DNA from: Bugula neritina
Lineage: Eukaryota > Animalia > Bryozoa
Length of the DNA stretch: 16,837 bases
Reading direction: 5' to 3'
Assembly: GCA_964035545.1 (NCBI GenBank)
Contig: CAXIUT010000170.1
Location: forward strand, 1 to 16,837
Under the pieces are notes generated by a model. That model made no database searches. It was not told where the DNA came from and was given only the letters and a program-made list of their open reading frames with translations. The position numbers and the translations under genes are program-made. Position 1 is the stretch's first letter; every line of letters starts with the position of its first letter. Positions 1 through 16,837 of this stretch are shown here, in pieces.

Positions 1-94
1 CCAACCCCAACCCCAACCCCAACCCCAACCCCAACCCCAACCCCAACCCCAACCCCAACCCCAACCCCAACCCCAACCCCAACCCCAACCCCAA
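1..94. repeat. Left telomere, (CCCCAA)n
   Basis: Uninterrupted CCCCAA hexamers from base 1 to 94. C4A2 is the Tetrahymena-type (oligohymenophorean) ciliate telomere repeat. Confidence 0.99.
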
Positions 95-151: not shown

Positions 152-862
152 TCATTGGATATAAGTTCTAGCCGTATCTTTTTTCTGGTCTCTTCTTCCT
201 AACTATTTTCTTTTTGTCTAATAATTTTTATTTTCTTCTCCCTTTTCCATTTGGGTTATTTTATTTTGTTGCATTTTTTTTTTTGCTGAAAAAGATCTAT
301 ATTCCTCTACTATTTGATTAATAGACTTTCCAAATTAATCCTCAATTTTTTTATCTCCTTTAATATACATATCTAATTCCTCTTTCAAATCTATAATCTC
401 TTTCTGCTTTTTTTTGATTTCTATCTTAAGAACAAGAACTTATTTTACATAACTTTGTTCTTAAGATAAAATATCATCATGATCTGACAGAGTTGAGATA
501 CCTAAATATCTTAGTTCTGATTTGAATTCTTCTTTTAGCTCATTAGTTTTGAACAAACATTTTTTGATCTATTAATGATTAATTTTTTTTTCTTTTTATT
601 CCAGTTTTTTATCTTTCTTTGCTTGTTTTTCTTTTTCTTTATTTTTTTGTTTACTTATGAATTCGCTATTTTCTACAATATAATTTTTTATTTCAATTTA
701 TAATTTTTGAATTATTTTCAGCATAAGTGAACGCTAGTAATCGAATCGGATAGATTCTTTTTATGCCTGTTGTCTAATCTAAACAAGTTTTTATCGAATA
801 ATAGATAGTTCCTCTTCTTAATTATCAATTAGAGTAAGTTGTTTCTCACTAAATGTAGTCAT
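152..862 (-). CDS. Hypothetical Glu/Lys-rich coiled-coil protein, 236 aa (TAR=Glu)
   Basis: ATG at 862 to TGA at 154-152 with no internal TGA. Reads MTTFSEKQLTLIDNEEEELSIIREKLVEIRQQAEKE...KIEIKKKQKEIIDLKEELD...TARTYIQ. Heptad-like E/K/L/I composition; no family recognised. Confidence 0.75.
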
Positions 863-1095
863 TTATTAAATTATCTTTGTTAAGTTTTGATCCTTTGATT
901 TTATTTATAAAATACGAATTAATATTGAATTAGTAACGAACTCTTAATCAATCATGAATTATAATACAATTTTAAAACATTTTTATTCCCATTCATATTA
1001 AAACAAGGTAGAAAAGTAACTAAAAGTTTTAGTTTTAGTTTAGAGTTCAGCCGAAAAAAAATGATAACACAATAAAAAGAAATAAATCCATACTA

Positions 1096-1353
1096 TCAGA
1101 AGTCGTATTCTTCTAGCTTAAGAAAATCAATATTATCATCCACAACATCTTCAATTAAATTAGAAAAATCATGCAAATAATTATTGTATTGATGATTTTT
1201 CTTTAACTCCTCTTCTTATAACAGTTTTTTGTATTAATTCAGACATTTCTAATATAAATTTCTAGTGCTTATCTAGTAAAAGATATTGTTGACTGTATCT
1301 AGAAAACCATATTTAATTTATTATCTCTTATTCAATGATTGCTAGCTTTCCAT
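1096..1353 (-). CDS. Small hypothetical protein with acidic C-terminus, 85 aa
   Basis: MESEQSLNKREEIKYGFLDTVNNIFYEISTRNLYEKCLNEYKKLLEEEELKKNHQYNNYLHDFSNLIEDVVDDNIDFLKLEEYDF*. It fills the gap between two genes and ends in TGA-T like the others. No homology recognised. Confidence 0.5.
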
Positions 1354-1511
1354 TCGATGATTTCTAATATATTATTAATTATAAACAAACTGTCCTCTGA
1401 AGTACTTCAACAATCAAATATGATTTTCTACATTAATCCCAATCCTCAGATACTCAATATTATCAGAATCAATCAATTAAAAAGCTTTATTCAATCATTT
1501 AAATTAATATA

Positions 1512-2228
1512 TCATTGTTTATTTATTATTTTAAGATAACAATATCCGTCATTGTAATTCCAGTCCTCTAGAAGTTCTTTCAAACTAAGGTTAAGATCTA
1601 TTGCTATGTTATGGCTTAAAACTTATTTTTGAACCAAATCAAGTTCAAATAAATAAAAACAATATTATTTTATCGTCATTTTAAGTCGTTCTTCTTTTCT
1701 TTAGATCAGTTTTCCCTAAATAATTACCTTCAAAGCAATTGCATTTCCTTAGTATTTTGATACTTTATGCAAACAATGGCTAAAACCCTTCAAATGAAGA
1801 TTATAGAGCTCCATTTGAGACTATAAATTCAGTTTTTTGAAAACATGATCGCACCCTCCTTCCCGATTAATAATAGTATACCCTTTTTTCCAGCTTATCA
1901 TCATCAATCTAAATCCTTACGGATATATCAGTTCACTATGTTCTACCTCGACCTATCCATAATTGTCCACAAATAGCCCGATTGGTAAATCTAATGGCAA
2001 ATACTCTCCTTTATACTTCAATCTTATTTTTCCAGACGAACAGCCTTCTGGAAAATATATACGGAAATGTGCAAATAGAGTGGGTAAGTAGAGTGCAGGA
2101 TAATGAAAATGATAGAGAGAAAGAGGAAGTACTTAAGGACGATAGAGCTAGTCGAGTTATTAATAGAGAGATGGAGTTATTTGGAAGTAGCAAAGTAATT
2201 TACTTCTTCTCAAAATTTAATCACTCAT
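1512..2228 (-). CDS. ATG5: Autophagy protein 5 homologue (divergent), 238 aa
   Basis: KIRLKYKGEYLPLDLPIGLFVD resembles ATG5 [34 protein letters not shown] resembles the helix carrying the ATG12-acceptor Lys. The C-terminal VLSHNIAIDLNLSLKELLEDWNYNDGYCYLKI resembles [32 protein letters not shown]. The frame is continuous from ATG to TGA. Confidence 0.75.
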
Positions 2229-2296
2229 ATTAATAGTTTATAATAAGCTTTATATATTCAAGATCGACATAATCCAATACCTTTAGATCGATATAA

Positions 2297-3979
2297 TCAG
2301 ATACCATACCGCATTCTGAGTTCAGGATCTATTATTTGTTTTCTTCTTTTCCTTTTAGGAGGTTCTTTCTTTATTTCTTCAACTTCTTCTGACTCTTTTT
2401 TCTCTCCCTTCCCCAAAGAACTATTCCCTCCATCTTTTGTCACAGACTAACGGTTGTCATCATTTCCATCTCCATTTATTCCATTCACAAAATTTAGATT
2501 TTCATTCTTATAGTCATTATTTTCAGACTCCTAAGAAGAACTTTCACTTTCCTTTTTCTTCATCCATTTATTCTGAGTAACATTTTATATCACCAAGGCT
2601 GTATCTTGTTTTGGTTCATTCTAAATATTCTAAAGAGTATCTTACTGTTTAATAGCTTCCACATTCTTTTACTAAAGATTGTTTTGGACAGTATTCTCAC
2701 TGCTAAAATATTTTTATTTGATTGATAACGGTAGTTCCACTGCAAAAAAAATTAACAAATTAACAGAAAAAGTGAAAACACAAGCTATGGCAGCTGCTCG
2801 ACTAGATGCATAGTTGTCCTGGTTTATCTAAACCAAATAGTACATTATTAGAAGTACAACAGTCAATGCCTAGGCTACTTTATAGACTGCTAACCTACTG
2901 AATTCTTTATAAAGCCCATTGATATAGTCAAATATGAACTAAACAACCAAGAAGACAAAGGCAAAGATAAAGAAGAGATATTGATACTTTAGAGGAACAA
3001 CTATCATAACTGGTAAGATAATCTTTTTAGCAAAGTTAATATACATCACTTTTTTAGTTTTGAAGTATTAAATTCTGTAATAATAAGAGTAGGACATCAC
3101 AAACACAAGAATATGTAGGTATATTACACTTAAAGCAACAACACCTACATTGACAGGACTAACGAAAACCAGACTTACCAACAGGACCAAACAAGTCTCT
3201 TGTACCATCAAAAATAAAAAGCATAACAAAAATTTAGCCATGGTTATAAGTACATCTTCACTAAATGTTTTCCAACAAGAACAACTCTCGTCAGTTTCTT
3301 CTCCATCTCTCTCTCCCGAATCCCGTCTCGATTGAGAAGATTTGTTAGACACACCTTCAAATATCACATCTTCTTTTTTCTTTTATTCCACTCTCTTCGA
3401 GCGACGAAGAGTAATACAAGAAATAATAATTAATAAAATCAAAGGAATAAGAGTAAAAGCAGCCAAAAGAGCCAGATTTTAACCAATAGAGGTAGTTTGA
3501 AGATATTTATGAAGTCTGTAGTTTTTACTTGCCACCATTACATAGTCCTAGGTTTTGTAACTATAACCAACCACATTGAATATCATTAGGTATTGAAATC
3601 CTTGTAGAACGTATCCTATTGGATTAACCCAAGCAATCTCCACTAAGTTGTATAATCCATATGTTTGGAAAGTTAGCAAAAGGTAGAAAGATTACTTTGT
3701 ACGAAAAAACAGACACACTGATATCAAAAGCAGAAAGATTATTATTCCTAAAGCATTTGCTTCTGGAGCAAAAGTTTATACACAAGTGCCGGAAGGGTAA
3801 ACACTAGACCAATATTAGGAAGGCATGACTGTGGGATCTTCCACTGTTTCTATCAGAGATCCAACCGGACAAGTCAGACAACTCACGTACTATGAACCAG
3901 TGCAAGTAGCGCAGGAATAGTGACAGTTAGAACTATTCGAAATGGTGAACAACAAGGAAAGGAGGTATATAATGATCAT
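2297..3979 (-). CDS. Multi-pass membrane protein with signal peptide and one furin-like Cys-rich repeat, 560 aa
   Basis: MIIIYLLSLLFTISNS (signal peptide), then CHYSCATCTGSEYVSCLTC, then roughly 8-9 hydrophobic segments and a charged low-complexity tail ending ...KRKRRKQIIDPELRMRYGI*. Contains track ORF 3068..3367 in frame; no internal TGA. Confidence 0.85.
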
Positions 3980-4099
3980 TTTATTATTAATAGAGTTGAA
4001 TACAAAAGATTATCTTCAATTAACTATGAATCAATAAATAAACCTGATAGTTTTAAATTGATCTGTATTTTTGATATATTAAATATAAATCAAATCCTG

Positions 4100-5194
4100 A
4101 TGATGAAAATTTGTCCCTGTCTCAGAGACTTATGCCAGTTTGGCAGAAGAAAATAACTAAAAGAGAAAAGTAGATAAGCTGAAGAAGAGGAACTCATCAA
4201 TCAGATCAACTAGTAAACCGCCCTTGCAGACATCATCCCACAATCATCAACTCGTCATAAAACAACCAAGGATCATTCCAATTAAAAAATCAAAATCCCA
4301 GACTATTTCTAAAAAGAAGAGCCTCAATTATCCAGTGAATAAAGTGATTTGCTTAACGTTAAGATGTAGCTTTCTCCTCAGAACTAAAAGAAATAAATAA
4401 ATAAAAACAATTAAGAAAGAGATATTGAAGATCTCATTCGAGAATAGTTGAAGCTAACACCTCCAAAAGCAATTCAAAAAGAATATTAGTAGTAACCTTA
4501 ACTAAAGATAAAGGAATAATCTTTTTAAGTGATGTTCTAATAGATAAACCAACATACTTTTACAATAAATTTGGATCCTCTTGACCCTTTCTATTCGATT
4601 GTCCACTAAAAAACTAACAAAATAACAGAACATTTTTCCAAGAAAGGACCTTTAATCGATATTGTAGGTTAAAATAAAGCTAGTTTTGAAATAATGAATC
4701 TATCAAGCAACAGACTAACAACATTTTTAATAAAGTACAAGTTAAAATGCAGTTTTTCATAATATTTTACATTATGCAAAAACTAAAAGATCCATTTGTC
4801 CTTTAGCAACACGATCAGTGATATAAAAGTTATTTAGACATTCAAACCTAACCTTACAAAAAACACCATTAAATTCAAACGACTAGGAAGCTTCGAATCT
4901 AGAGACTGTTTTTATATCAAATATCAAAACAGTTCAAAACAGTAACATTGGGAAATCTATATCAATGATGATAAAGCCTAAAGTAGTCCTTCTTTCAAAA
5001 CCTGTGAGTTATTCTGCATCAAAAACATCAGATAACTACAAGCAAGAAAACTATCTATTACTTAATATCTATAGATAGACCTACAGTCAAGTAACATCAA
5101 CAACATGATACCTAAATTAGCCAATTAGTACAAAAACTATCTCAATAGTATGCAAACACATATAGAAAACAACTATCTCCAGGAAACTGCCTGA
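4100..5194 (+). CDS. Putative START/Bet v1-like lipid-binding domain protein with acidic N-terminal region, 364 aa
   Basis: Open frame from ATG 4100 (or 4103) to TGA 5192-5194. The N-terminus MMKICPCLRDLC is followed by a Glu-rich region. The C-terminal ~200 aa contain IKFKRLGSFESRDCFYIKY (START 'xxRD' strand), ITEYLEIDLQS and a terminal amphipathic helix. The CDS is well supported; the domain call is tentative. Confidence 0.6.
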
Positions 5195-5264
5195 TCATTA
5201 TTTATGTCATCAATTAAACTTTAACTTTATTTGTCAAAGTTTAAATATTATCTACAATTTGAAA

Positions 5265-7259
5265 ATGAATAAAATATTACAAATAGTAGAAAGATTTCTT
5301 CGAAAATATCCTTCAACTACCAATATACAACCTCTAAATAACTTCCTCAAACTATAATACCTTTATTCATCTCCTTATACAAACTCGAAACATAAAAAAA
5401 ATATTATCTTTCCCATTAAAAATATCTTGCAAGGCTAAATTCAATAAAATCTATCAAAAAGCCTCATTTATTCCTCGAAAGGAAGAATAGAAGAATCAGA
5501 ATCATTCGATTCTATCTTAATCAATAACAAACACTAAAAAATAATTCAAGACGATTGTTTTGGTAAACCGCATCACACTCTTGACCACTCTCTATGGATT
5601 TATATCGCATAAATTAAGTAAGAATCAGTAAAAAGTTACTTTAATTTTGGAAAAGGAAAGTTAAAATATGTTTTTGATTTCGGGTAGGGATACGAAGGAA
5701 TCAAACAAGTTGGAATATTTATATGGCATAAAAAAAATAAACAAATTTATCAAGTGTAAATTGATAAAAATATTATTCCAGCTCATGTTAGTTTTGCCAA
5801 CTCTTAGGGATCAGAAATTATATTCCATGGATATTAAAGAAAACACTTTGGATCAGGCATCTTACACTGTCTCAACAGAAAAGTCAATCTTTATCATGCT
5901 CAACTAACATTTACTAAAAATCTCTTTAAAGACTAATAACAGATCAAATAGGAACAAAAGTAAGTCAATATATGTAGAAGCTAAGTCACTGATATCTTTG
6001 ATGACAAAAACTAAACAAAAATGTTTCCAAGAGTATCTCCATGCTATAACTATCTGGTCTACCTCAGCGGAACAGATATCATACACACATTCTACCTTGA
6101 TCTAGTCATAGCTAAAAAAGTTAATAAAAAATGGATCTAAACTTATAGGCTCAAAGAAAAGGTTGTAGGATTTTACGATTCCCTGACAAACTATCTTGTT
6201 AAATAAAAAAATTCTATCTACAATATCTTCCAGACATACTAAAACTCAACCAATCAAATTTATAAAATAAACATTTAAACTCATTAAATCATCAACCTTA
6301 CTAAGACATTCCATCATTCTAATTTCACTATTACCGATGTCAAACCAACCGGACTTATCACAGGAACCATTTCCACCTATAACTACAATACCTTTTTCTA
6401 CAGTTAATAAAATCAACTCATCCCGATCGACCCTCTCAGTAAATAATCCTTTTCAGTTCAAGAATATAAAACACCCATACCAGCAGTTCTCCTTACTGAA
6501 AAACATGAAAATATAGATGAAGAATTCAGAGAGAGATCAAAGAATAGACCAATGATCGTTATATTTCATGGTGGCCCTCATGCTACTTACATACCCATGT
6601 TAACAAGTCTCAGATATACTCTTCTAAAAATGGGATATGCTATTCTCCTACCTAACATTCCAGGATCAACCAGCTATGGACCAGAATACCTCAAAAAATA
6701 ACTCAAAGGAATAGGAGAAAAAGATGTCAAGCCGTTTCTCGAACTCTTAGATACTATCCTCGACTAGGAATGGACTATCAATAAGGAAAGAGTTCATGTG
6801 CTTGGAGGAAGTTATGGAGGGTATCTTGCCGCATTACTAGGCTCAAGATATTCTTAATACTTCAAATCAGTCATTATTATGAATGGAGTTCTCAACAATG
6901 CCGCTATGATGTGGTTTACTGATATTCCAGAATGGATTACAGCTGAAACTCTGGGTCATTCTCAACTACACTCCCTTTCCTAATAAGATTATACCTAAAT
7001 GTGGAAGCAATCAGCTTCTATGAAGCCTATGAAAGTCCCAAGTTTACAATTTTTGGGAGGTAAAGATCTAAGAGTTCCTTACAGACAAGGCTTGTTTTTT
7101 GATGCTATAACGAAAGAATATGGTACACCTATTACCACTCATGTTTACTAATAAAGTAGTCATAGTTTGTAAGATTCTGTTGAAACATCAATAGACATTT
7201 TGGTAAAATCAGTTGCCTTTTTATAAGAAATTAAGGAGGAGTAGTTAAAAATTAAATGA
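5265..7259 (+). CDS. APEH: Acylaminoacyl peptidase (APEH-like, peptidase S9C), paralogue 1, 664 aa
   Basis: N-terminal WIYIAE and DFGE motifs, FHGGPH oxyanion segment, nucleophile GGSYGG at ~6804-6821, catalytic Asp in GGKDLRVP and His in ESSHSL. Length is a multiple of 3 and the motifs share one frame. Confidence 0.92.
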
Positions 7260-7361
7260 TATTTCAACTTGATTATATAAAAATAATGATAATTTGATTT
7301 GTTTACTCAATAAAACAACAATTACAATAGTTAGACTTGATTAAAATAAATATCTGTCACA

Positions 7362-8573
7362 ATGCAAAAGGAAGATAATGATTACTATACCCCTCCAAAA
7401 ACAGCTAAAATGTTCATCAACACCATCCAAAACGCCTTCCATAAAAAATAAGGAGACAAAATAGCAAAAGAACTCAAAGATCTCTATTTCACTCCTCTAT
7501 ATCATAATGTACCTGAAAAAAACTGGCATCTTACAATAAATACTCAATCATTCAACGATGCATAACCATCTATTGGATCTGCCTTTGCTAAGTTATTAGA
7601 ACTAGTAAGAGACTATTCGATCGAAAGGGCGGGAAGCCGATGGTCTGAATGTTTTTAAAAGCATATGCAGACCTTGATAGTTGTTCTGAGGGTGTTGTAA
7701 GAGATGAAAGATGTGAAATTTTGGGTTGTGAAGGGGTTATTAGTAGTGTTAAGAGCAACAAAAAAGATATTTTTGACATGTTTGCAAAGAATAAACAATA
7801 GCACAATGGCAGCTCGACTAAAAAACTCTCTCTTCAACACTCTTCAACGTTTTAAAACAGCTAAAGCTTTATAATAAATTTTAAAAAGGTAGTTTCTTTC
7901 ATTGGTTGATGTGATGCAAGTGTCTATTCTTCTTTTCTTTCACAACTACGAACAAATCCAAAGAATTCTCTACTCTTCAAAAATTTATGGATAAATAAGT
8001 GATCGATATATAGATAACTTTTTATTTCAAAAAGGTAAATACGCTCTTATAAATGAGAAGTTTTCATAAGCTGAAAGTAGTTTTATGAAAATAAGACTAA
8101 AAACCCAAGGACAGAAAAGACTAGTCATGAGATATCTCATTCCTTGTAGAATATTTCTTGGAAAACTATATTAATCAAAAAACAAATAATAGTTTACTTA
8201 ATACTAAGAATTAATATCAGCAATAAAGACAGCAAATTTCAAACTATATGATTAAATAACTAAAAGATATCAAAAACTATGGCTCAAAAGAGGCATCTAT
8301 CTGCTAATGGATAGAGTAAAAATCATCCTTTGGCGAACTCTTATCAAACAACTCTTCCATGCTGTTGGAACCAAAATAGATCTATAAATAGTAGAACGAG
8401 TTGTAAATTTACGAGGAGGAAACGAAGAAATCAATGAGTGTATCTGCATTGTAGCCAATCTCATTTATTAGGGATACATTAAAGGATATATATTCCAGAA
8501 TGAAAGCAAGAGGACTTTGGTATTGAAAAGCAGTGGAAACCCTTTTCCTAAGCTTTAGGTGATTGCAAAGTGA
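7362..8573 (+). CDS. PCID2: PCI-domain protein PCID2/Thp1/Csn12-like (TREX-2 type), 403 aa
   Basis: QKRLVMRYLIPCRIFLGK, WLKRGIYLLMDRVKIILWRTL and C-terminal ECICIVANLIYEGYIKGYI...LVLKSSGNPFP match the PCID2 family winged-helix C-terminus. Confidence 0.85.
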
Positions 8574-8606
8574 TTAATTAAATAAGATAATATATCAACA
8601 ATTATA

Positions 8607-10747
8607 ATGTCTGCCAGTGAAGGGGATAAGTTGGACCAGGTAGAAAGCTTGGTTCATACCATCCTGGCTCTTCCCAACTGTCAACAAACAGAAGTCTAAA
8701 GACATATCGCAGGTATTCTCCTCGAATAGTCACCCATCAACTCTGCCTAGCTCTCATAAATGATCCAAGACTTCCTCACTCTCTTCAGACTAGAACGCAC
8801 ATAATCTAACAAACGATGTTAAAACCTATTTACGACAATGAAGCAAGCTAAACTACTAAGTGAAGATAATAAATTTAGTCTATCAGCAGATAAACTGGAC
8901 AAAGCTGTGGTGTTAGAAGAAGTATTATCGATGGATGAAGCCAGACAGCCTCTATTTGCCAAGAAGCCAACAGCTGGCAACAGCAATACCTAGATGTCTA
9001 AATGGAAGAAGAAAGAGAAAGGAAAAGATAAAAACCAACATAAAGCTTTAGCCAGTTTTCAAAAGCATATGGTTGAAATAGAACAAAGAAAAAAGTAACT
9101 ACCACCTGTGCAAATAAGAAGATAAATGATGGGACTCAGTAGAAATAACGATCTTATTCTTGATAACATTAGTTTAACTATTGCAGGTAAAACTCTTCTA
9201 GAAGCAACAAATCTAAAAATAGCCTATGGTCGTAAATATGGTTTAGTTGGCCGTAATGGTATCGGTAAAACTTGTCTTATGAACTCCCTGGCTAGAGGAT
9301 AATTTCCTAAAATGCCCAAGCATCTACAAATTCTATTAGTTGAACAATAGCTTAGAGATACTTCAAAGTCAGTCATGCAAACAGTCCTAGAAACAGATAT
9401 AGAAAGAGAGTAACTCCTCAGTTAACAAGAACAACTCTCTAATGAAGAATCTAACTCAAGTTCTGTGACAAATAGGCTCAATCAAATCTACAAAAGATTA
9501 GATTAAATTGATGCAAACAAAGCTTAGTCAAAAGCTGCAACCATCTTGGGTGGTTTAGGATTCACCGTCAGCATGCTTCAAAAACCCGTAGGATCGCTTT
9601 CAGGAGGATGGAGAATGAGAGTTGCTCTTGCCCGTGCCCTCTTTGTCTAACCTGAAGTTCTTCTATTGGATGAACCCACCAATCATTTAGATTTAGATGC
9701 TGTCATGTGGCTCTAAGATTACATCTGTAACTGTAAAAGCACAGTAGTTATAGTTTCTCATGCTAGATAATTTTTAAATGTAACTTGTAATGAAATCATT
9801 CACTTTTTCAACTAAAAATTGCACTACTATAGAGGTAACTACGACACATTTTAAAAATTGAGGATATAGAATAGAGAAAGAAATAAAAAGTCTCTTGATA
9901 ACCAACAAATGAAACTAGAACATATGCAAGCCTTTATCGATAAATTCAGGTACAATCCTCTCTACTCAGATTTAATGCTAAACGAGCCTCTCTGGTCCAA
10001 TCCAGAATCAAAGCTATCAATAAAATGGAGATGGTGGAGTAGATCATAGAAGATCCCAGCTGTGTTTTCATCTTTCCTAGTCCAGATAAACTCAGGCCTC
10101 CTCTCCTCAAAATAGAAGACGGATACTTTGCCTATTCATAGCAATAGAATATTTTGAGAAACATCAACTTCGCAATAGACATGGAAAGTAGAATCGCTAT
10201 AGTAGGAGCCAATGGAGTCGGTAAAAGTACCCTTCTTAAGCTGCTTGTAGGATCACTTGAACTTTCAAGTGGAAATTCTTACAGAAATTCAAGACTAGGA
10301 CTTTCCATGTTTACACAACACCACGTTGACCAGCTAAAACTTCATCTATCTCCTCTCGAACAGTTTATTTAAGACTTCCCCAACGGAACACAAGAAGTTT
10401 ACAGGTCTCATCTTGGATCTTTTGGTGTTACTGGCACTCTTGCTCTCAGACCTAACTATCTCCTCTCTGGAGGACAAAAATCAAGAGTAGCTTTCGCCCT
10501 GGCAATGTGGAAAAACCCTCATATATTAGTACTGGATGAGCCTACTAATCACTTAGATATTGATGCAGTCAATGCTCTCATTATAGCTTTAAACAACTAC
10601 CAAGGAGGAGTTATTATCGTTTCTCATGATCAGCATCTTATTTCTACGGTCTGTGAATAAATCTGGTACATCAAAGAGACAAGAGTTAGAAAATTTGTTG
10701 GAGATTTCTAGGATTACAGGAGACAATTAGCTCAAGGAAAACTTTGA
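8607..10747 (+). CDS. ABCF3: ABC-F family ATPase ABCF3/GCN20, 706 aa; join(8607..9949,9970..10747)
   Basis: Two ABC domains and no TM segments: [43 protein letters not shown]; then [34 protein letters not shown]. The linker [24 protein letters not shown] is restored by removing a 20-nt intron. Confidence 0.95.
9950..9969 (+). other. 20-nt spliceosomal intron (GT...AG) in ABCF3
   Basis: GTACAATCCTCTCTACTCAG. Its removal repairs the frame shift between DKFR and (F)[11 protein letters not shown], giving a spliced CDS of 2121 nt (707 codons). Confidence 0.88.
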
Positions 10748-10765
10748 TTTGTATAACATAAAGCA

Positions 10766-11764
10766 TCATATATTTTTAGATGAAGAAGGAGAGTCATTAT
10801 GCCACTATCCAGGATACTTCTTGCCATTAACGATCAGTACTCCTCGACCTTCGCGCTTACCATTCACCCATTCTCCCTCAAACTTCTTTCCATCTCTGCT
10901 CTTGAACTTTCCATGTCCCTCCTTTTTATCATTGGAATACCAACCTTCGTAACTAGAAGAATCTAGCCATAAATAAGTCCCGAATCCATGCTTTTTTCCG
11001 TCAATAAAGCCTCCCTCATAGGTTTCTCCATTTTTGTACTTGATTTTTCCTCTTGTTGAAGTCATTTCATTATTTGAAAACTCTCCCTCGTATTCCCACT
11101 CTTCTCCATTCACATAGTAACCATTTCCATGCTTTTTACCTGCCACATACTATCCTTCGAAAACAATCGTCGAACCAGGCTTGCTCCAAACTTATTTACC
11201 TTTTCCATTGGGAAGATCGCCCTACCACTATCCTTCATATCTATATCCTATATTTTCATAACAGAAAGTTCCCTGTCCTTGCGCTTGCTCTTTAAAAAGT
11301 TCACCTTAGTAATACCACCCCTGAGAACTAACAAATCTTCCCTGACCACTTGGGACTCCTTTAATAAAAGATCCTGTATAGCAACTACCATCAGGATAGA
11401 CTAATCTTCCTTAACCATGTGGTAGACCATCTAACCATTCACTATTGGCATCATATATGAGTCCTGCATTATTGATAGCAAAAGCAGAGGAATCTTTAGT
11501 ACCGTTTGGCATTTAAAATGAGGATGTAGGGACAAAAATTTTGAGTTTGTCTTAAATATCTGTAACATTAGGATGAGTTTTTGGGACAATATCTACTGGT
11601 GAAAAGTTTTTAACTAACAGATCTTATCTTTATGCAGCTGGATAGACTTGACTGAGATGGCTAACTTTTTGGAAAGCATCACTTTGAGTCATTTTATAGT
11701 TTTTGTTTGTGGGATCATGTTCCCGTTTATCAGTTTTATCATCAGAGCAGCATTGCTGTCCCAT
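10766..11764 (-). CDS. MORN-repeat protein with N-terminal MGQQCC acylation motif, 332 aa
   Basis: Joins track ORFs 11630..11833 and 10805..11146 in one frame. Contains repeated YEGEW/YEGGFIDGKKHGFG/YEGWYSNDKKEGHG/FEGEWVNGKREGRG MORN units and ends ...PGEWHNDSPSSSKNI*. Confidence 0.92.
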
Positions 11765-12494
11765 TATAGAATTGTTAAATATTATACTCTTAACTGACCT
11801 TTTGTAATTTAGATAATTTATTGAAATAATCAAACTAAATTAAACTAAAAATCATCACTTTGAACATTAGATATCAAATCAGTCTTAAATACAATTAACC
11901 ATTTTTAAATAGATAATCAAGTTTATTAATAATAATCCAAAATTAACAATTACAACTTTCTTTTAAAATAATCACTCGTTCTAGAACTCTTAGTCAAGAA
12001 AAGAACATAGTTTTCAACTCTGCACGTTTAGATCGATAAATTTTAAATAATATATAAAAGATTAAAACTACTTATCATAAAAACATTTCCAATTCAAAAC
12101 AAGAGAATCAAAATAATAAAAATAATAAAAAGGAACTATATTTCAGTGATATTCATGTTCAAAGGAATTATCAACAACTAAGAAATCAATAAAACAACTC
12201 TTAATTACCTTCAGAAGGATCCTAGTCATTCTCAAAAAATTAAAAATACAAATGGACAGATAGAATACAACCAGATACAAAAGAAATTTTTATAAAAAAT
12301 AGTAAATTAGTTAATAAGTCAAAAGAAGCTTTTTTAAATTATAATAGTCAAAAGCCATTTTCTAAAAGAGTTACATAAAAAAGAAAAGTTTTTTTTCGAA
12401 CTAAATAAAACTAATATGATTTTGAATAAATCTGATTCGTTCATAATTGGTCAGCTACTATCTGAGTAATTATATCAAATTACTTAAAATATAA

Positions 12495-13304
12495 TCATGG
12501 ATCAGTCATCTAATACTTCAAAGCTGCAGTATCAAACACCATCAACATAAGTGCCCAGCTAGTGGCTTGAAAAGGAATAACCATAGCTCCTTTGTAAAAC
12601 CCTTTAAATCCTTCTTCTTTCCATATTTTACTTCCATATTTTAGAAATCCAAGAAGTGAGTTCATGATAATCCTTCTCCTTCTAACAATTTCGATGGGAT
12701 ATACAGCAGTTTCAGCAATAATGGAACAAAAATAAGCTAAAAAGGCTTTTTATTGAATAGTTTTTGCCTTAGTTTTATTAGTATCATAAGTTCCATTATA
12801 TATAGCTCGATAAGTGCACATGGTCAATAGTACATTAGGATATCCTTTATAGAAATATTTATAGCCATATTGAGAAGTGATAGTGGTAATTGCCTTTAAG
12901 ATTGAAAGATGTTTTTGAGTGTTGTTATTTTGCAACTGTCGGACGATATCAGTCGGATAGATGAGAGTTGTTGCTGATATTCCAGATGCCATTGATATAA
13001 AGATGTTGTTAATGAATTTGTTTTAAAAATACCTTTGAAGAGTTCCACGCACATAGTAATTAATCACCTCTATTGGATATATTCTACTCAACATTACCAA
13101 ATTTCCCTTCCAAAATGCTAATATCCCCTCAGTTTTATAAATAGTTGAAGCGCAATTCGATATCGATCTGTATGATTGGGAAATACGACCAAGAGCCAGC
13201 AACTATTTGTTTGTTATCATACGCATCTTCAATATCTATAATGGAGTGTTTATCGTGAATATTAATATCACAGAAACAGTCTTCAATATTATTTACTCCA
13301 ACAT
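12495..13304 (-). CDS. Mitochondrial carrier (SLC25), divergent ADP/ATP-carrier-like, 269 aa
   Basis: Three Px[DE]xx[KR] signatures: TPLEILKMR, YPTDIVRQ, YPIEIVRRR. Also EGILAFWKGN, YRAIYNGTYDT and EEGFKGFYKGA. The loop NKELLALGRISQSYRSISNC and the YRAxYxGxYD motif are AAC-like. Confidence 0.88.
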
Positions 13305-13346
13305 TGCATCACCTATTATTTAATTAATTAAATATATCTCATTATT

Positions 13347-14618
13347 TTATTGCTTATCATTTATCATCTTATCATTTATTAATTATCATCTTATTGCTTA
13401 TCATTTATCATCTTATCATTTATTAATTATCATCTTATTGCTTATCATTTATCATCTTATCATTTATTAATTATCATCTTATTGCTTATCATTTATCATC
13501 TTATCATTTATTAATTATCATCTTATTGCTTATCATTTATCATCTTATCATTTATTAATTATCATCTTATTGCTTATCATTTATCATCTTATCATTTATT
13601 AATTATCATCTTATTGCTTATCATTTATCATCTTATCATTTATTAATTATCATCTTATTGCTTATCATTTATCATCTTATCATTTATTAATTATCATCTT
13701 ATTGCTTATCATTTATCATCTTATCATTTATTAATTATCATCTTATTGCTTATCATTTATCATCTTATCATTTATTAATTATCATCTTATTGCTTATCAT
13801 TTATCATCTTATCATTTATTAATTATCATCTTATTGCTTATCATTTATCATCTTATCATTTATTAATTATCATCTTATTGCTTATCATTTATCATCTTAT
13901 CATTTATTAATTATCATCTTATTGCTTATCATTTATCATCTTATCATTTATTAATTATCATCTTATTGCTTATCATTTATCATCTTATCATTTATTAATT
14001 ATCATCTTATTGCTTATCATTTATCATCTTATCATTTATTAATTATCATCTTATTGCTTATCATTTATCATCTTATCATTTATTAATTATCATCTTATTG
14101 CTTATCATTTATCATCTTATCATTTATTAATTATCATCTTATTGCTTATCATTTATCATCTTATCATTTATTAATTATCATCTTATTGCTTATCATTTAT
14201 CATCTTATCATTTATTAATTATCATCTTATTGCTTATCATTTATCATCTTATCATTTATTAATTATCATCTTATTGCTTATCATTTATCATCTTATCATT
14301 TATTAATTATCATCTTATTGCTTATCATTTATCATCTTATCATTTATTAATTATCATCTTATTGCTTATCATTTATCATCTTATCATTTATTAATTATCA
14401 TCTTATTGCTTATCATTTATCATCTTATCATTTATTAATTATCATCTTATTGCTTATCATTTATCATCTTATCATTTATTAATTATCATCTTATTGCTTA
14501 TCATTTATCATCTTATCATTTATTAATTATCATCTTATTGCTTATCATTTATCATCTTATCATTTATTAATTATCATCTTATTGCTTATCATTTATCATC
14601 TTATCATTTATTAATTAT
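13347..14618. repeat. Perfect tandem array: 44-bp unit x 28 plus a 40-bp partial copy
   Basis: Unit TTATTGCTTATCATTTATCATCTTATCATTTATTAATTATCATC. Units start at 13347, 13391 ... 14579. Display lines recur every 660 bp (15 x 44), and I saw no variant copies. Confidence 0.98.
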
Positions 14619-14632
14619 TATTTTATTTACCA

Positions 14633-16717
14633 TCACTTAGAAAACTCTTCCCCTCCCTTTTCTAATTTGTTCTCGATCTCTTTTATCTGCTTCTTTTTCA
14701 AGACCTGCCCCTCTAATAAAAGTTCAGGCTTTTATAAAAAAAATATCGTTTTCAAAGTTATATCCATAGCAGTATCAACAGAGTCCGACAAAGAATGTCC
14801 GCTATTCTCGTATACATAGGTATTAATAGGCACTCCGCTCTCTTTAGTAATCGAATCGAAGAATAATCCCTGTCTCCAAGCCACTCTTCTATCTTTGGCT
14901 CCCAAAAACTGAAGAGTTGGAATTTTCATCGGTTCGGAAGAAGGAGATTGTCTCCACAGAGCTTGATAATCCTCCCAACTCAAGTTGTGCAGTTCACACT
15001 TGCCTAAAGTTTCAGCAGCATTCCAATCAGGAATATCACTAAACCACAAATTTCCAATCAGATTGATCACTCCATTCAGAATAATTGCGCTTTTAAAGAC
15101 CTCAGCGTATCTGACGCCAAATATCGCTGACATATAACCTCCATAACTGCCTCCCATTGTATGCACATTGCACTTGTCTATATCTGGATGATCACTTAAG
15201 ACTTTTCGAGTTACTCCAATGACCTAAGCAGCATCTACTTCTCCTATTTTAGCTAAACTGGCCTCAAGAAATTCTTTACCATAACCTGCTGAACCTGAAA
15301 AGTTAGGATATAAAAGATAAAATCCCATCTTTAGGAGAACATATCTGAGACAAGTAAGCATATGTCCATAGGATCCATGAGGTCCACCATGTGGCATCAC
15401 AATAAGAGGTCTTTTTGAAACTCTTCCTTCAAACTGACTCCAAATATGTTCTTCTTTCGCTGATACCAGGAGAGCATGGATCGGTTAAAAATATTCCTTT
15501 TGTAAGAAGTCCTCTTTTGATGGAGGTTCAATAATAGTTATCTTTTTATGTTTAATATAGAAGAAAGAATTATAGTTATTGGTAGTGACGATTCCAAATA
15601 TGACATTTTGTTCTATACTGGTGATCTAAAAGGAGTGATTTAAATAATTTTAAGTGATGTTGTTATACTAGCCTGTTTCTAAGTTTATTTTGTAAATATG
15701 AGAGCTACTTCTTTCACTTGTCTGAGTTATTCCGAATACTTGGTCATCTTACTAGATTAAATAGTTTTTAAGAGTAGAATTATATCCTATGATCTTTTAC
15801 TTTATCCGGTTGGTCTCCACCCATTCTCCTTCCTTCTTCTTACATACAACGAAATCTTTATAAAAAGTATGAGTCTTACCAGTTCCACTCAAATAAACAC
15901 AATAATTCATACATTTTGATATCTTTGGAAACACTTTGGTTTAGTTTTTGTCATTAACGAATAACTCAATGACCTAAGCAATCACCTCTTTCTTGTCATT
16001 TTTCTTTTATTCTACTTATTTTTCGTTCTCCAGTATTTAATATTTCGCAGAATAGATACCAATAGGTTTGTTGAAGCAAAAAACGAGGCCATAGCCAAAA
16101 GATCGAACCTTATATGCATGAAATATGATTTATGTGCCTTCTTGATTAGCAAAGGAAGCATAGCATGGAATCAAGTTGCTTTATATGGGAATTCTAACAA
16201 CTTTTTTCAGTGCTTTATTCCACACAAAGATTCCAGTTTCTTTAATATTGTCATAGGTTTATCCGAAATCATGTTTAAAGGGTAATTTTCCTTTACCTTG
16301 ATTGAAATAACTTTTAGGTTAATCTTGCTTGATTTAAGCTATATAGACCCATTTAGATCCATTTGAGCTAGATTGAGCTTCTCCAAAAACATCATCTTGA
16401 AACACCTTCTCATGCTTACCTTTAGTCTCAATTGAATCGAATGAACTACTTTCCTATATTCTTCCTTTTTCACTGTTATGAGATAACCTTTTCATAACCG
16501 GACTGATCTTTTGAAACTGTTTCGTGTTTTAGTGAATGTAGTAAGACTCCTTTTTATTTTTGCTATCTGTGTAAGGAGAAGAATATGAATGAGTGAGTTT
16601 AAAGAAATTCTAAAAATACTAGATTGATGCTACAGATGGATATTTCTTTAAATACTCCTATACTTTCTCTAGTACTAGCTATTGAAGAACCTTTTGCTCT
16701 GTTATTGGTATTTACAT
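14633..16717 (-). CDS. APEH: Acylaminoacyl peptidase (APEH-like, peptidase S9C), paralogue 2, 694 aa
   Basis: Starts ATG TAA ATA (MEIPITEQ...) at 16717. Contains WVYIAE, DFGE, VMPHGGPH, GGSYGG, GAKDRRV and ENSGHSL. Includes track ORF 14732..15166 in frame and ends ...GGEEFSK* at TGA 14635-14633. Confidence 0.92.
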
Positions 16718-16741
16718 TTAAAATATCTTTTAAAATATCCA

Positions 16742-16837
16742 GGGGTTGGGGTTGGGGTTGGGGTTGGGGTTGGGGTTGGGGTTGGGGTTGGGGTTGGGGT
16801 TGGGGTTGGGGGTTGGGGTTGGGGGGTTGGGGTTGGG
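16742..16837. repeat. Right telomere, (GGGGTT)n
   Basis: GGGGTT hexamers to the end of the window, the reverse complement of the left end, with one G5 and one G6 run distally. Confidence 0.99.

What the first reader, a model, noticed from the sequence alone, without database searches (positions are those of the whole stretch)
152..14635. Every predicted stop is the tetranucleotide TGA-T (11 of 11)
Seen: CAA TGA T (152), TTC TGA T (1096), CAA TGA T (1512), ATC TGA T (2297), GCC TGA T (5194), AAA TGA T (7259), AAG TGA T (8573), CTT TGA T (10747), ATA TGA T (10766), CCA TGA T (12495), AAG TGA T (14633). Even assuming 40% T, 0.4^11 is about 4e-5. Known: eRF1 reads the +4 base, and standard-code eukaryotes generally favour a purine there. 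Inference: termination may use an effectively four-base UGAU signal read by a modified UGA-only eRF1, or TGAT may double as a 3'-end-processing signal given the tiny 3' UTRs. I cannot tell whether a similar bias is already reported for related ciliates.
Basis: partly seen in the sequence, partly recalled or inferred. Interest (0 to 1): 0.7.

Follow-up and report, generated by a model that had tools for sequence, protein, structure and literature searches.

The report
UGA stop almost always followed by U
In this ciliate, whose only stop codon is UGA, about nine genes in ten have a U right after the stop, and relatives with the same genetic code keep that U, so it is a strong, selected version of the known effect of the base after a stop codon and not a new mechanism.

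Summary
Confirmed. All 11 TGAT sites exist. Nine end ORFs with strong coding signal and two (1096, 1512) end weak ORFs.

The window is a complete 16.8 kb ciliate macronuclear chromosome (C4A2/G4T2 telomeres) inside a 216 Mb assembly that earlier scan notes call a bryozoan. TAA/TAG encode Glu (peritrich code) and TGA is the only stop.

In about 215 kb of this ciliate, a stop caller blind to the +4 base gives T at +4 in 57 of 64 clean gene ends (89%; A 6, C 1, G 0). Positions +5 to +24 carry only 33-48% T. Non-stop TGAs have T next in 33-49%.

At the orthologous CCT-gamma stop, 20 of 20 distinct metagenomic relatives that read TAA/TAG as Glu (GC 29-55%) keep TGA-T, while +5 onward varies freely. 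Ciliates that read TAA/TAG as Gln show about 45-62% T (Paramecium 15/26).

The best reading is selection for the least leaky UGA-N signal. It is a preference, not an obligatory four-base stop, because about 10% of genes end in UGA-A. The eRF1 is altered (QIKD for NIKS, GTS loop one residue shorter), but no link to +4 is shown. The 3'-end-signal idea is unsupported, and no RNA data exist.

The scan had already noted this bias on two other contigs of this genome.

The parts
1..94 (.). Left telomere, C4A2 repeats. With the G4T2 repeats at 16741-16837 it shows that the window is a complete macronuclear chromosome.
   Evidence: Read directly. The window is the whole of contig C179.
151..154 (-). 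Stop TGA (152-154) plus +4 T (151) of an unknown gene whose coding signal spans 152-850.
   Evidence: Coding score 28, coding runs up to the stop, nothing coding downstream.
1095..1098 (-). TGA-T ending a weak 105-codon ORF (1096-1413); tentative gene.
   Evidence: Coding score only 5.0.
1511..1514 (-). TGA-T ending a weak 269-codon ORF (1512-2321); tentative gene.
   Evidence: Coding score only 5.1.
2296..2299 (-). TGA-T ending a probable membrane-protein gene (ORF 2297-4015).
   Evidence: Coding score 26 and tail score 4.4. No Pfam match for the piece tested.
5192..5195 (+). TGA-T ending an unknown gene (3899-5194).
   Evidence: Coding score 30.
7257..7260 (+). TGA-T ending a gene (5253-7259) that looks like a paralogue of the S9 peptidase gene at 14633-16600.
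   Evidence: Coding score 63. Its pieces read like those of the 14633 gene, but the two pieces scanned gave no Pfam match.
8571..8574 (+). TGA-T ending an unknown gene (7344-8573).
   Evidence: Coding score 23.
9950..9969 (+). 20-nt GT..AG intron in the ABC-F gene. It explains the apparent ORF end TGA-G at 10155-10157.
   Evidence: Read directly. Removing it joins frames 8574.. and 9899.. into a continuous ABC-F linker. ABC_tran domains lie on both sides.
10745..10748 (+). TGA-T ending the ABC-F ATPase gene (about 8607-10747).
   Evidence: Coding score 32. PF00005 matches at 9126-9299 and 10373-10657.
10765..10768 (-). TGA-T ending a MORN-repeat gene (10766-11722). It lies only 18 nt from the convergent ABC-F stop.
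   Evidence: Coding score 53. PF02493, E 3e-18.
12494..12497 (-). TGA-T ending a mitochondrial-carrier gene (12495-13385).
   Evidence: PF00153 matches reach profile position 88 of 96 five codons before the stop. Coding score 16.
14632..14635 (-). TGA-T ending an S9 prolyl-oligopeptidase-family gene (14633-16600).
   Evidence: PF00326, E 1e-14, reaching profile position 196 of 213 near the end. Coding score 54.

Best explanation
The organism is a ciliate with the peritrich nuclear code: UAA and UAG encode glutamate and UGA is the only stop. In it, and in the relatives that share this code, purifying selection keeps a U immediately after the stop codon. About 80-93% of genes end in UGA-U, about 10% in UGA-A, and almost none in UGA-G or UGA-C. 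The likely reason (inferred, not shown) is termination fidelity. UGA is the leakiest stop codon, this lineage has no other, and UAA/UAG cannot serve as back-up stops. In yeast UGA-U is the least read-through of the four UGA-N signals: a C after the stop weakens eRF1 recognition, UGA-A is preferred by near-cognate Trp-tRNA and UGA-G by Cys-tRNA. So U is the base that best favours eRF1 over tRNAs. Shown here: the bias, its restriction to real stops, its independence of base composition, and its conservation across relatives. Inferred: that the selected property is termination efficiency.
For: The bias in this ciliate: a stop caller that never looks at +4 (a three-periodic Markov coding score upstream of the TGA, with no coding signal downstream) gives T 57, A 6, C 1, G 0 at 64 clean gene ends. 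The stricter cut gives 42/45 and a looser 'terminal' class gives 66/84.

Position specificity: +5 to +24 carry only 33-48% T.

Controls: TGAs that are off-frame, antisense or otherwise non-stop have T next in 33%, 42% and 49% of cases. ORF ends caused by introns or frame changes have 42% T (14/33).

Conservation: at the orthologous CCT-gamma stop, 20 of 20 distinct metagenomic relatives that read TAA/TAG as Glu (GC 0.29-0.55) have TGA-T. In the same sequences +5 to +15 and the synonymous sites just upstream vary freely. Other gene ends in those loci give 23/28 T.

Contrast with Gln-code ciliates: CCT-gamma stops at the conserved position give 8/13 T, other metagenomic gene ends 5/11, annotated Paramecium genes 15/26, and Ichthyophthirius 2/5. 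This ciliate versus Paramecium: Fisher p = 0.002.

Mechanistic precedent: in yeast the readthrough order is UGA-C > A > G > U, with Trp-tRNA preferring UGA-A and Cys-tRNA preferring UGA-G/C (PMC4748822). C after UGA is avoided in other UGA-only ciliates (PMC10553269). T is more frequent than A after terminating TGA/TAG in Condylostoma (PMC5062323).
Against: No functional data exist for any ciliate, so the link to termination efficiency rests on yeast and mammalian reporters. In mammalian cells UGA-A, UGA-G and UGA-U contexts were all classed as strong (PMC5829715), so a generic fidelity argument does not obviously predict an almost exclusive U. It also does not explain why Paramecium, which is equally UGA-only, shows a much weaker bias. 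Gene ends were called by a coding score, not from RNA. The relatives are related to one another, so 20/20 is not 20 independent events.
Confidence: 0.65

Rival explanations
1. Co-evolved release factor. The peritrich-type eRF1, altered at the residues that read the stop codon, recognises U at +4 directly or needs it for efficient binding. UGA-U would then be a true quadruplet signal for this factor, not just the generically least leaky context.
For: The single ciliate eRF1 found (contig C314) has QIKD where the family has NIKS and a GTS loop one residue shorter than human eRF1. The bias is far stronger in the Glu-code clade than in Gln-code ciliates, as expected if it tracks a lineage-specific factor.
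Against: About 10% of well-supported genes end in UGA-A. From my own knowledge of the solved termination complexes, the +4 base stacks on 18S rRNA rather than on eRF1. Only one eRF1 sequence of the clade was seen, so no correlation could be tested.
Confidence: 0.17
2. TGAT is part of an mRNA 3'-end-formation or UTR signal, needed because 3' UTRs are tiny.
For: Intergenic spacers are very short, for example 18 nt between the convergent stops at 10747 and 10766.
Against: Only +4 is constrained and +5 to +24 show no motif. TGAT occurs 847 times off-frame in about 133 kb of coding sequence, so it could not specify a 3' end. Short E-clade contigs that may be transcripts end 21-41 nt after the stop, not at it (weak evidence). 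No RNA runs were available.
Confidence: 0.05
3. Context-dependent meaning of UGA: only UGA-U terminates, and UGA-A/G/C inside genes is translated (as Trp, Cys or Sec) or read through by design.
For: It would explain the near absence of UGA-G and UGA-C at gene ends.
Against: Of 123 strong ORF ends, only 6 are followed by coding signal in the same frame, and 4 of those 6 are TGA-T. No in-frame TGA was seen in the CCT-gamma matches of the Glu-code relatives. UGA-A ends genes that have no coding signal downstream.
Confidence: 0.03
4. Composition, mutation bias or gene-calling artefact: T is simply common in AT-rich 3' flanks, or the first reader picked stops by eye.
For: The genome is about 30% GC, and T follows 39% of all TGAs in the window.
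Against: Neighbouring positions have 33-48% T against 89% at +4. The bias persists in relatives with 47-55% GC. My caller ignores +4. Non-stop TGAs do not show the bias.
Confidence: 0.02

Closest known systems
Tetranucleotide stop signals: the effect of the +4 base on eukaryotic termination efficiency (McCaughan 1995; Beznoskova 2016, PMC4748822; Cridge 2018, PMC5829715)
   Same: A single base after the stop codon is non-random at real stops. In yeast UGA-U is the least read-through UGA-N and UGA-C the most.
   Different: From my own knowledge, standard-code eukaryotes mostly favour a purine at +4 and their biases are modest. Here U reaches about 90% and is invariant at an orthologous stop across a whole clade.
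Stop-codon context in other UGA-only or ambiguous-code ciliates (Oligohymenophorea sp. PL0344, Paramecium, Tetrahymena: C avoided after UGA, PMC10553269; Condylostoma: T more frequent than A after terminating TGA/TAG, PMC5062323)
   Same: The direction of the bias is the same (C avoided, T favoured) in ciliates that depend on UGA.
   Different: Those reports describe mild trends. My own counts for Paramecium are 15/26 T. I found no report of a near-exclusive U, nor of its association with the Glu-code (peritrich) clade.
Bacterial +4 U preference (Poole, Brown and Tate 1995, E. coli; from my own knowledge)
   Same: U after the stop is the strongest termination context and is enriched in highly expressed genes.
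   Different: The release factors (RF1/RF2) and the ribosome are different, and there is no homology of mechanism.
Peritrich nuclear genetic code (NCBI table 30; Campanella, Carchesium: PMC5062323)
   Same: TAA/TAG align with Glu and TGA is the sole stop.
   Different: It is a ciliate assembled alongside what earlier scan notes describe as a bryozoan, with 5-100 kb chromosomes and C4A2 telomeres.

Membership tests
Ciliate with the peritrich nuclear code (table 30) | In-frame TAA and TAG stand where homologues have Glu | tested here: met
   In eRF1, 6 of 8 in-frame TAA/TAG fall at positions that are Glu in human eRF1 as I recall that sequence. In CCT-gamma of the relatives at 84.5% identity or more, almost all in-frame TAA/TAG align with Glu of the query, and TAA/TAG alternate with GAA/GAG at one codon.
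Ciliate with the peritrich nuclear code (table 30) | TGA is the only stop codon | tested here: met
   All strong ORFs are delimited by TGA and contain many TAA/TAG. The longest standard-code ORFs are about 100-200 aa, against 400-1900 codons with TGA as the only stop.
Extended (tetranucleotide) stop signal | Position-specific base bias at +4 of real stops beyond local composition | tested here: met
   89% T at +4 against 33-48% at +5 to +24.
Extended (tetranucleotide) stop signal | The bias is absent at TGAs that are not stops | tested here: met
   33%, 42% and 49% T at off-frame, antisense and other TGAs; 42% at intron or frameshift ORF ends.
Extended (tetranucleotide) stop signal | Evolutionary conservation of the +4 base | tested here: met
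   20 of 20 distinct Glu-code orthologues keep T while the flanks vary.
Extended (tetranucleotide) stop signal | The +4 base changes termination or readthrough efficiency in this organism | not testable with these tools
   This needs reporters, ribosome profiling or in-vitro termination assays.
Obligatory quadruplet stop (UGA-V read as sense) | No gene ends in UGA-A/G/C, and UGA-V occurs in frame inside genes | tested here: not met
   6-14 well-supported ends are UGA-A. Same-frame continuation after a TGA is rare and is mostly after TGA-T.
3'-end-processing signal | A motif specific to mRNA 3' ends at a fixed distance from the poly(A) site | tested here: inconclusive
   There is no motif beyond +4 and TGAT is common elsewhere. 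Poly(A) sites could not be mapped because no RNA runs exist.

The most novel reading that the evidence does not exclude
The release factor of peritrich-code ciliates (QIKD in place of NIKS, shortened GTS loop) has become a true quadruplet reader that terminates efficiently only at UGA-U. The roughly 10% of genes ending in UGA-A would then be systematically leaky and make C-terminally extended proteins. This would be a lineage-wide change in how eukaryotic stop signals are decoded, tied to the Gln-to-Glu reassignment of UAA/UAG.
Probability: 0.12. Interest if true: 0.75.

Novelty: new variant of a known kind. Interest (0 to 1): 0.5.

Why it matters
Little is known about how ciliates that rely on the leaky UGA as their only stop codon keep termination accurate. 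A clade in which the base after the stop is almost fixed as U, opposite to the purine preference I recall for standard-code eukaryotes, is a natural experiment on the +4 effect. It predicts measurable differences between UGA-U and UGA-A/G/C. It offers an eRF1 with unusual stop-reading motifs to test. It also gives a practical rule for annotating genes in peritrich-code genomes and metagenomes: real stops are TGA-T, while TGA-G/C usually marks an unspliced intron or a frame change.

Tried and rejected
The sample therefore stayed at 20 stretches of 10 kb, the window and the eRF1 locus.

RNA evidence: the six runs that hold the stretch are of unrecorded kind, and the ten runs guessed to be RNA hold none of it. 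The four runs I laid down behave as DNA contigs, with no joints and coverage of the intron and the spacers. Poly(A) sites and splicing could therefore not be checked.

A beta-tubulin query returned only generic eukaryotic tubulins and no ciliate loci.

The exhaustive profile search with a CCT-gamma piece, followed by a cluster look-up, led to unnamed or non-ciliate proteins.

A model-free 'longest ORF' stop caller was too noisy in this AT-rich genome (67-72% T; its 'continuing' filter did not work) and was dropped.

The 24-residue eRF1 piece holding QIKD was too short to hit solved structures. That motif was read directly, against the known TASNIKS motif.

Tetrahymena could not be sampled. Walking along the Paramecium scaffolds was not possible, because neighbouring genes contain introns or TAA/TAG and cannot be given by reference.

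Tandem in-frame TGAs after the stop showed no visible enrichment in this small sample.

Full report
WHAT THE WINDOW IS

The 16,837-base window starts with C4A2 repeats and ends with G4T2 repeats. It is the whole of contig C179 of a 216 Mb, 321-contig assembly. Earlier notes of this scan describe the large contigs as a bryozoan and the small telomere-capped ones as a ciliate living alongside it; I did not test the host identity. All 20 other small contigs I sampled look like ciliate DNA: 19 start with the same telomere, GC is 25-34%, and their ORFs are long only if TGA is the sole stop.

In-frame TAA/TAG are sense codons, and they stand for glutamate, not glutamine.
- In the ciliate's eRF1 gene (contig C314, L001 589-1926, minus strand), 6 of 8 in-frame TAA/TAG fall at residues that are Glu in human eRF1. 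The human sequence is from my own memory. The canonical Gln positions, such as the GGQ motif, use CAA/CAG.
- In CCT-gamma of related metagenomic ciliates, TAA/TAG align almost only with Glu of the query.
- At one codon just before the CCT-gamma stop, TAA and TAG alternate with GAA and GAG among relatives.

This is the peritrich nuclear code, reported for Campanella and Carchesium (PMC5062323).

CHECKING THE OBSERVATION

All 11 heptamers exist at the given places. To judge whether they are real gene ends without looking at the base in question, I trained a three-periodic third-order Markov coding model on the long ORFs of the sample (about 215 kb). It separates the true frame from the other frames well: 5.2 +/- 2.9 against -10.3 +/- 9.7 per 150 nt, measured on the ORFs it was trained on.

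For every TGA I scored three things: the coding signal upstream in frame, the last 60 nt before the TGA, and the best coding signal in any frame on the same strand from +7 onward. The +4 base enters none of these scores.

- an ABC-F ATPase ending at 10747;
- a MORN-repeat protein ending at 10766;
- a mitochondrial carrier whose last repeat ends five codons before the stop at 12495;
- an S9 peptidase ending at 14633.

The gene ending at 7259 reads like a paralogue of that S9 peptidase, but its two scanned pieces gave no Pfam match. The ORFs ending at 1096 and 1512 have weak scores and are tentative. The strong ORF ends that are not TGA-T (10157 TGA-G, 3923 TGA-C) are followed by coding sequence in another frame. 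The first is explained by a 20-nt GT..AG intron at 9950-9969, which I read directly.

IS IT GENOME-WIDE AND SPECIFIC?

Over the whole sample, the 123 strong ORF ends have T 84, A 27, G 6, C 6. These include ends created by introns.
- Requiring coding signal right up to the TGA and none downstream gives 64 clean ends: T 57, A 6, C 1, G 0 (89%, CI 79-95%).
- A stricter cut gives 42/45, and a looser 'terminal' class gives 66/84.
- In the clean set, positions +5 to +24 have 33-48% T, so the signal is confined to one base.
- TGAs that are not stops have T next in 33% (off-frame in coding, n = 2529), 42% (antisense, n = 3101) and 49% (elsewhere, n = 4012) of cases.
- ORF ends followed by coding in a shifted frame have 42% T (14/33).

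IS UGA-V EVER READ AS SENSE?

Only 6 of the 123 strong ORF ends are followed by coding signal in the same frame, and 4 of those are TGA-T. The CCT-gamma matches of the Glu-code relatives hold no in-frame TGA. Several UGA-A ends have good coding signal up to the stop and none after it. So U is preferred but not obligatory.

RELATIVES

A scan of metagenome contigs with a stop-free 182-residue piece of CCT-gamma (L015) returned 80 loci. They fall into two groups.
- Those at 84.5% identity or more use TAA/TAG at Glu positions.
- Those at 78% or less use TAA/TAG at Gln positions.

At the orthologous stop, just after the conserved ...R-D-G, all 27 readable Glu-code loci have TGA-T. They make 20 distinct sequences including this ciliate's own, with GC from 0.29 to 0.55. 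In those 20 sequences +5 to +15 take all four bases, and the synonymous sites of the last codons vary. That is the pattern expected for purifying selection on +4 alone. Other gene ends in those loci, called with the same method, give 23/28 T.

Gln-code ciliates are clearly weaker.
- Ten metagenomic CCT-gamma stops at the conserved position, plus Paramecium tetraurelia, P. octaurelia and Ichthyophthirius, give 8/13 T.
- Other metagenomic gene ends give 5/11 T.
- Annotated genes around CCT-gamma give 8/13 in P. tetraurelia, 7/13 in P. octaurelia and 2/5 in Ichthyophthirius.
- This ciliate against Paramecium: Fisher p = 0.002.

The Paramecium figure (15/26) is itself slightly above a 40% background (p = 0.05). 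The Glu-code clade therefore looks like the extreme of a general tendency.

MECHANISM

Shown: a conserved U at +4 that is specific to real stops. Inferred: what it is for.

The best-supported reading is termination fidelity. In yeast, readthrough at UGA-N ranks C > A > G > U. A C after the stop impairs eRF1 decoding, UGA-A is preferentially read by Trp-tRNA, and UGA-G/C by Cys-tRNA (PMC4748822). UGA is the least robust stop, and C after it is avoided in other UGA-only ciliates (PMC10553269). In Condylostoma, T is more frequent than A after terminating TGA/TAG but not after internal ones (PMC5062323).

A lineage with UGA as its only stop cannot use UAA/UAG as primary or back-up stops. It also carries abundant tRNAs for UAA/UAG that are near-cognate to UGA; that last point is my inference. 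Such a lineage should be under strong pressure for the safest context.

This does not explain why the bias is so much stronger here than in Paramecium. One candidate is the release factor. The single ciliate eRF1 reads QIKD where the family motif is NIKS, and its GTS loop aligns to human eRF1 with one residue missing. No link to +4 could be tested, so I keep this as the main rival (0.17).

The 3'-end-signal idea lacks support and cannot be tested without RNA.

COMPARISON WITH WHAT IS KNOWN, AND NOVELTY

Stop-codon context effects are textbook knowledge, and mild C-avoidance or T-excess after UGA has been noted in ciliates. In six full-text searches and the papers I read I found no report of a near-fixed U at +4, nor of its association with the peritrich code.

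The scan itself had already noted the same bias on two other contigs of this genome (s1-435079 and s1-437855). My counts were made with my own method on other DNA, and they agree with those notes. I rate the finding a new variant of a known kind, of moderate interest.

LIMITS

- The sample is about 215 kb.
- Gene ends rest on a coding score, not on transcripts.
- The relatives are not independent of one another.
- Tetrahymena was not sampled.
- The human eRF1 sequence used for comparison is partly from memory; only residues 8-46 were aligned by a tool.
- The eRF1 ORF was read through TAA/TAG only inside a local script, for reading.

Noticed in passing
window 13347-14627: A tandem array of a 44-bp unit, 29.1 copies, 99% matching, lies between the start of the mitochondrial-carrier gene and the stop of the S9 peptidase gene. 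Read on the minus strand it accounts for 117 of the window's non-stop TGAT occurrences, so it inflates naive TGAT counts.
   Followed up: partly
window 8001-8004: In DNA run X2 two contigs break here. One continues into CCCAACCCC... (telomere-like) and the other has 21 unrelated letters. This suggests an alternative telomere-addition site or rearrangement junction inside the gene at 7344-8573.
   Followed up: no
window 10748-10765: Only 18 nt separate the stops of the convergent ABC-F and MORN genes, so their 3' UTRs must be tiny or must overlap the neighbour's coding sequence.
   Followed up: no
L001 589-1926 (minus), G000 contig C314: The ciliate's eRF1 has QIKD in place of the NIKS motif, a GTS loop one residue shorter than in human eRF1, and YNCDSRF as its YxCxxxF motif. 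The position of human Glu55 is a TAA codon, which is Glu in this code. The gene's own stop is TGA-T.
   Followed up: partly
G000 contigs C10, C11, C14, C15: These contigs start with C4A2 telomeres and also carry several internal G4T2 arrays, for example C10 at about 9.7, 11.0 and 19.6 kb. This looks like several minichromosomes joined in assembly, or alternative fragmentation sites.
   Followed up: no
window 7000-12999 in public runs: Near-identical DNA of this chromosome is held by runs labelled with three different organisms from three studies (shares 0.27-1.00; only five differences listed in run X3). The same ciliate, or a very close relative, therefore accompanies several hosts or samples.
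   Followed up: no
window 5253-7259 (+) and 14633-16600 (-): Two genes that look like paralogous S9 prolyl-oligopeptidase-family genes sit on opposite strands of the same small chromosome. Only the second has Pfam support.
   Followed up: no
L075, L078, L095 (metagenome loci): Single-gene CCT-gamma contigs end in other telomere types: G4T3-like in L075 and L078, where the gene stops at TAA, and G4T4 in L095, where it ends TGA-A. These are nanochromosomes of other ciliate lineages picked up by the same query.
   Followed up: no
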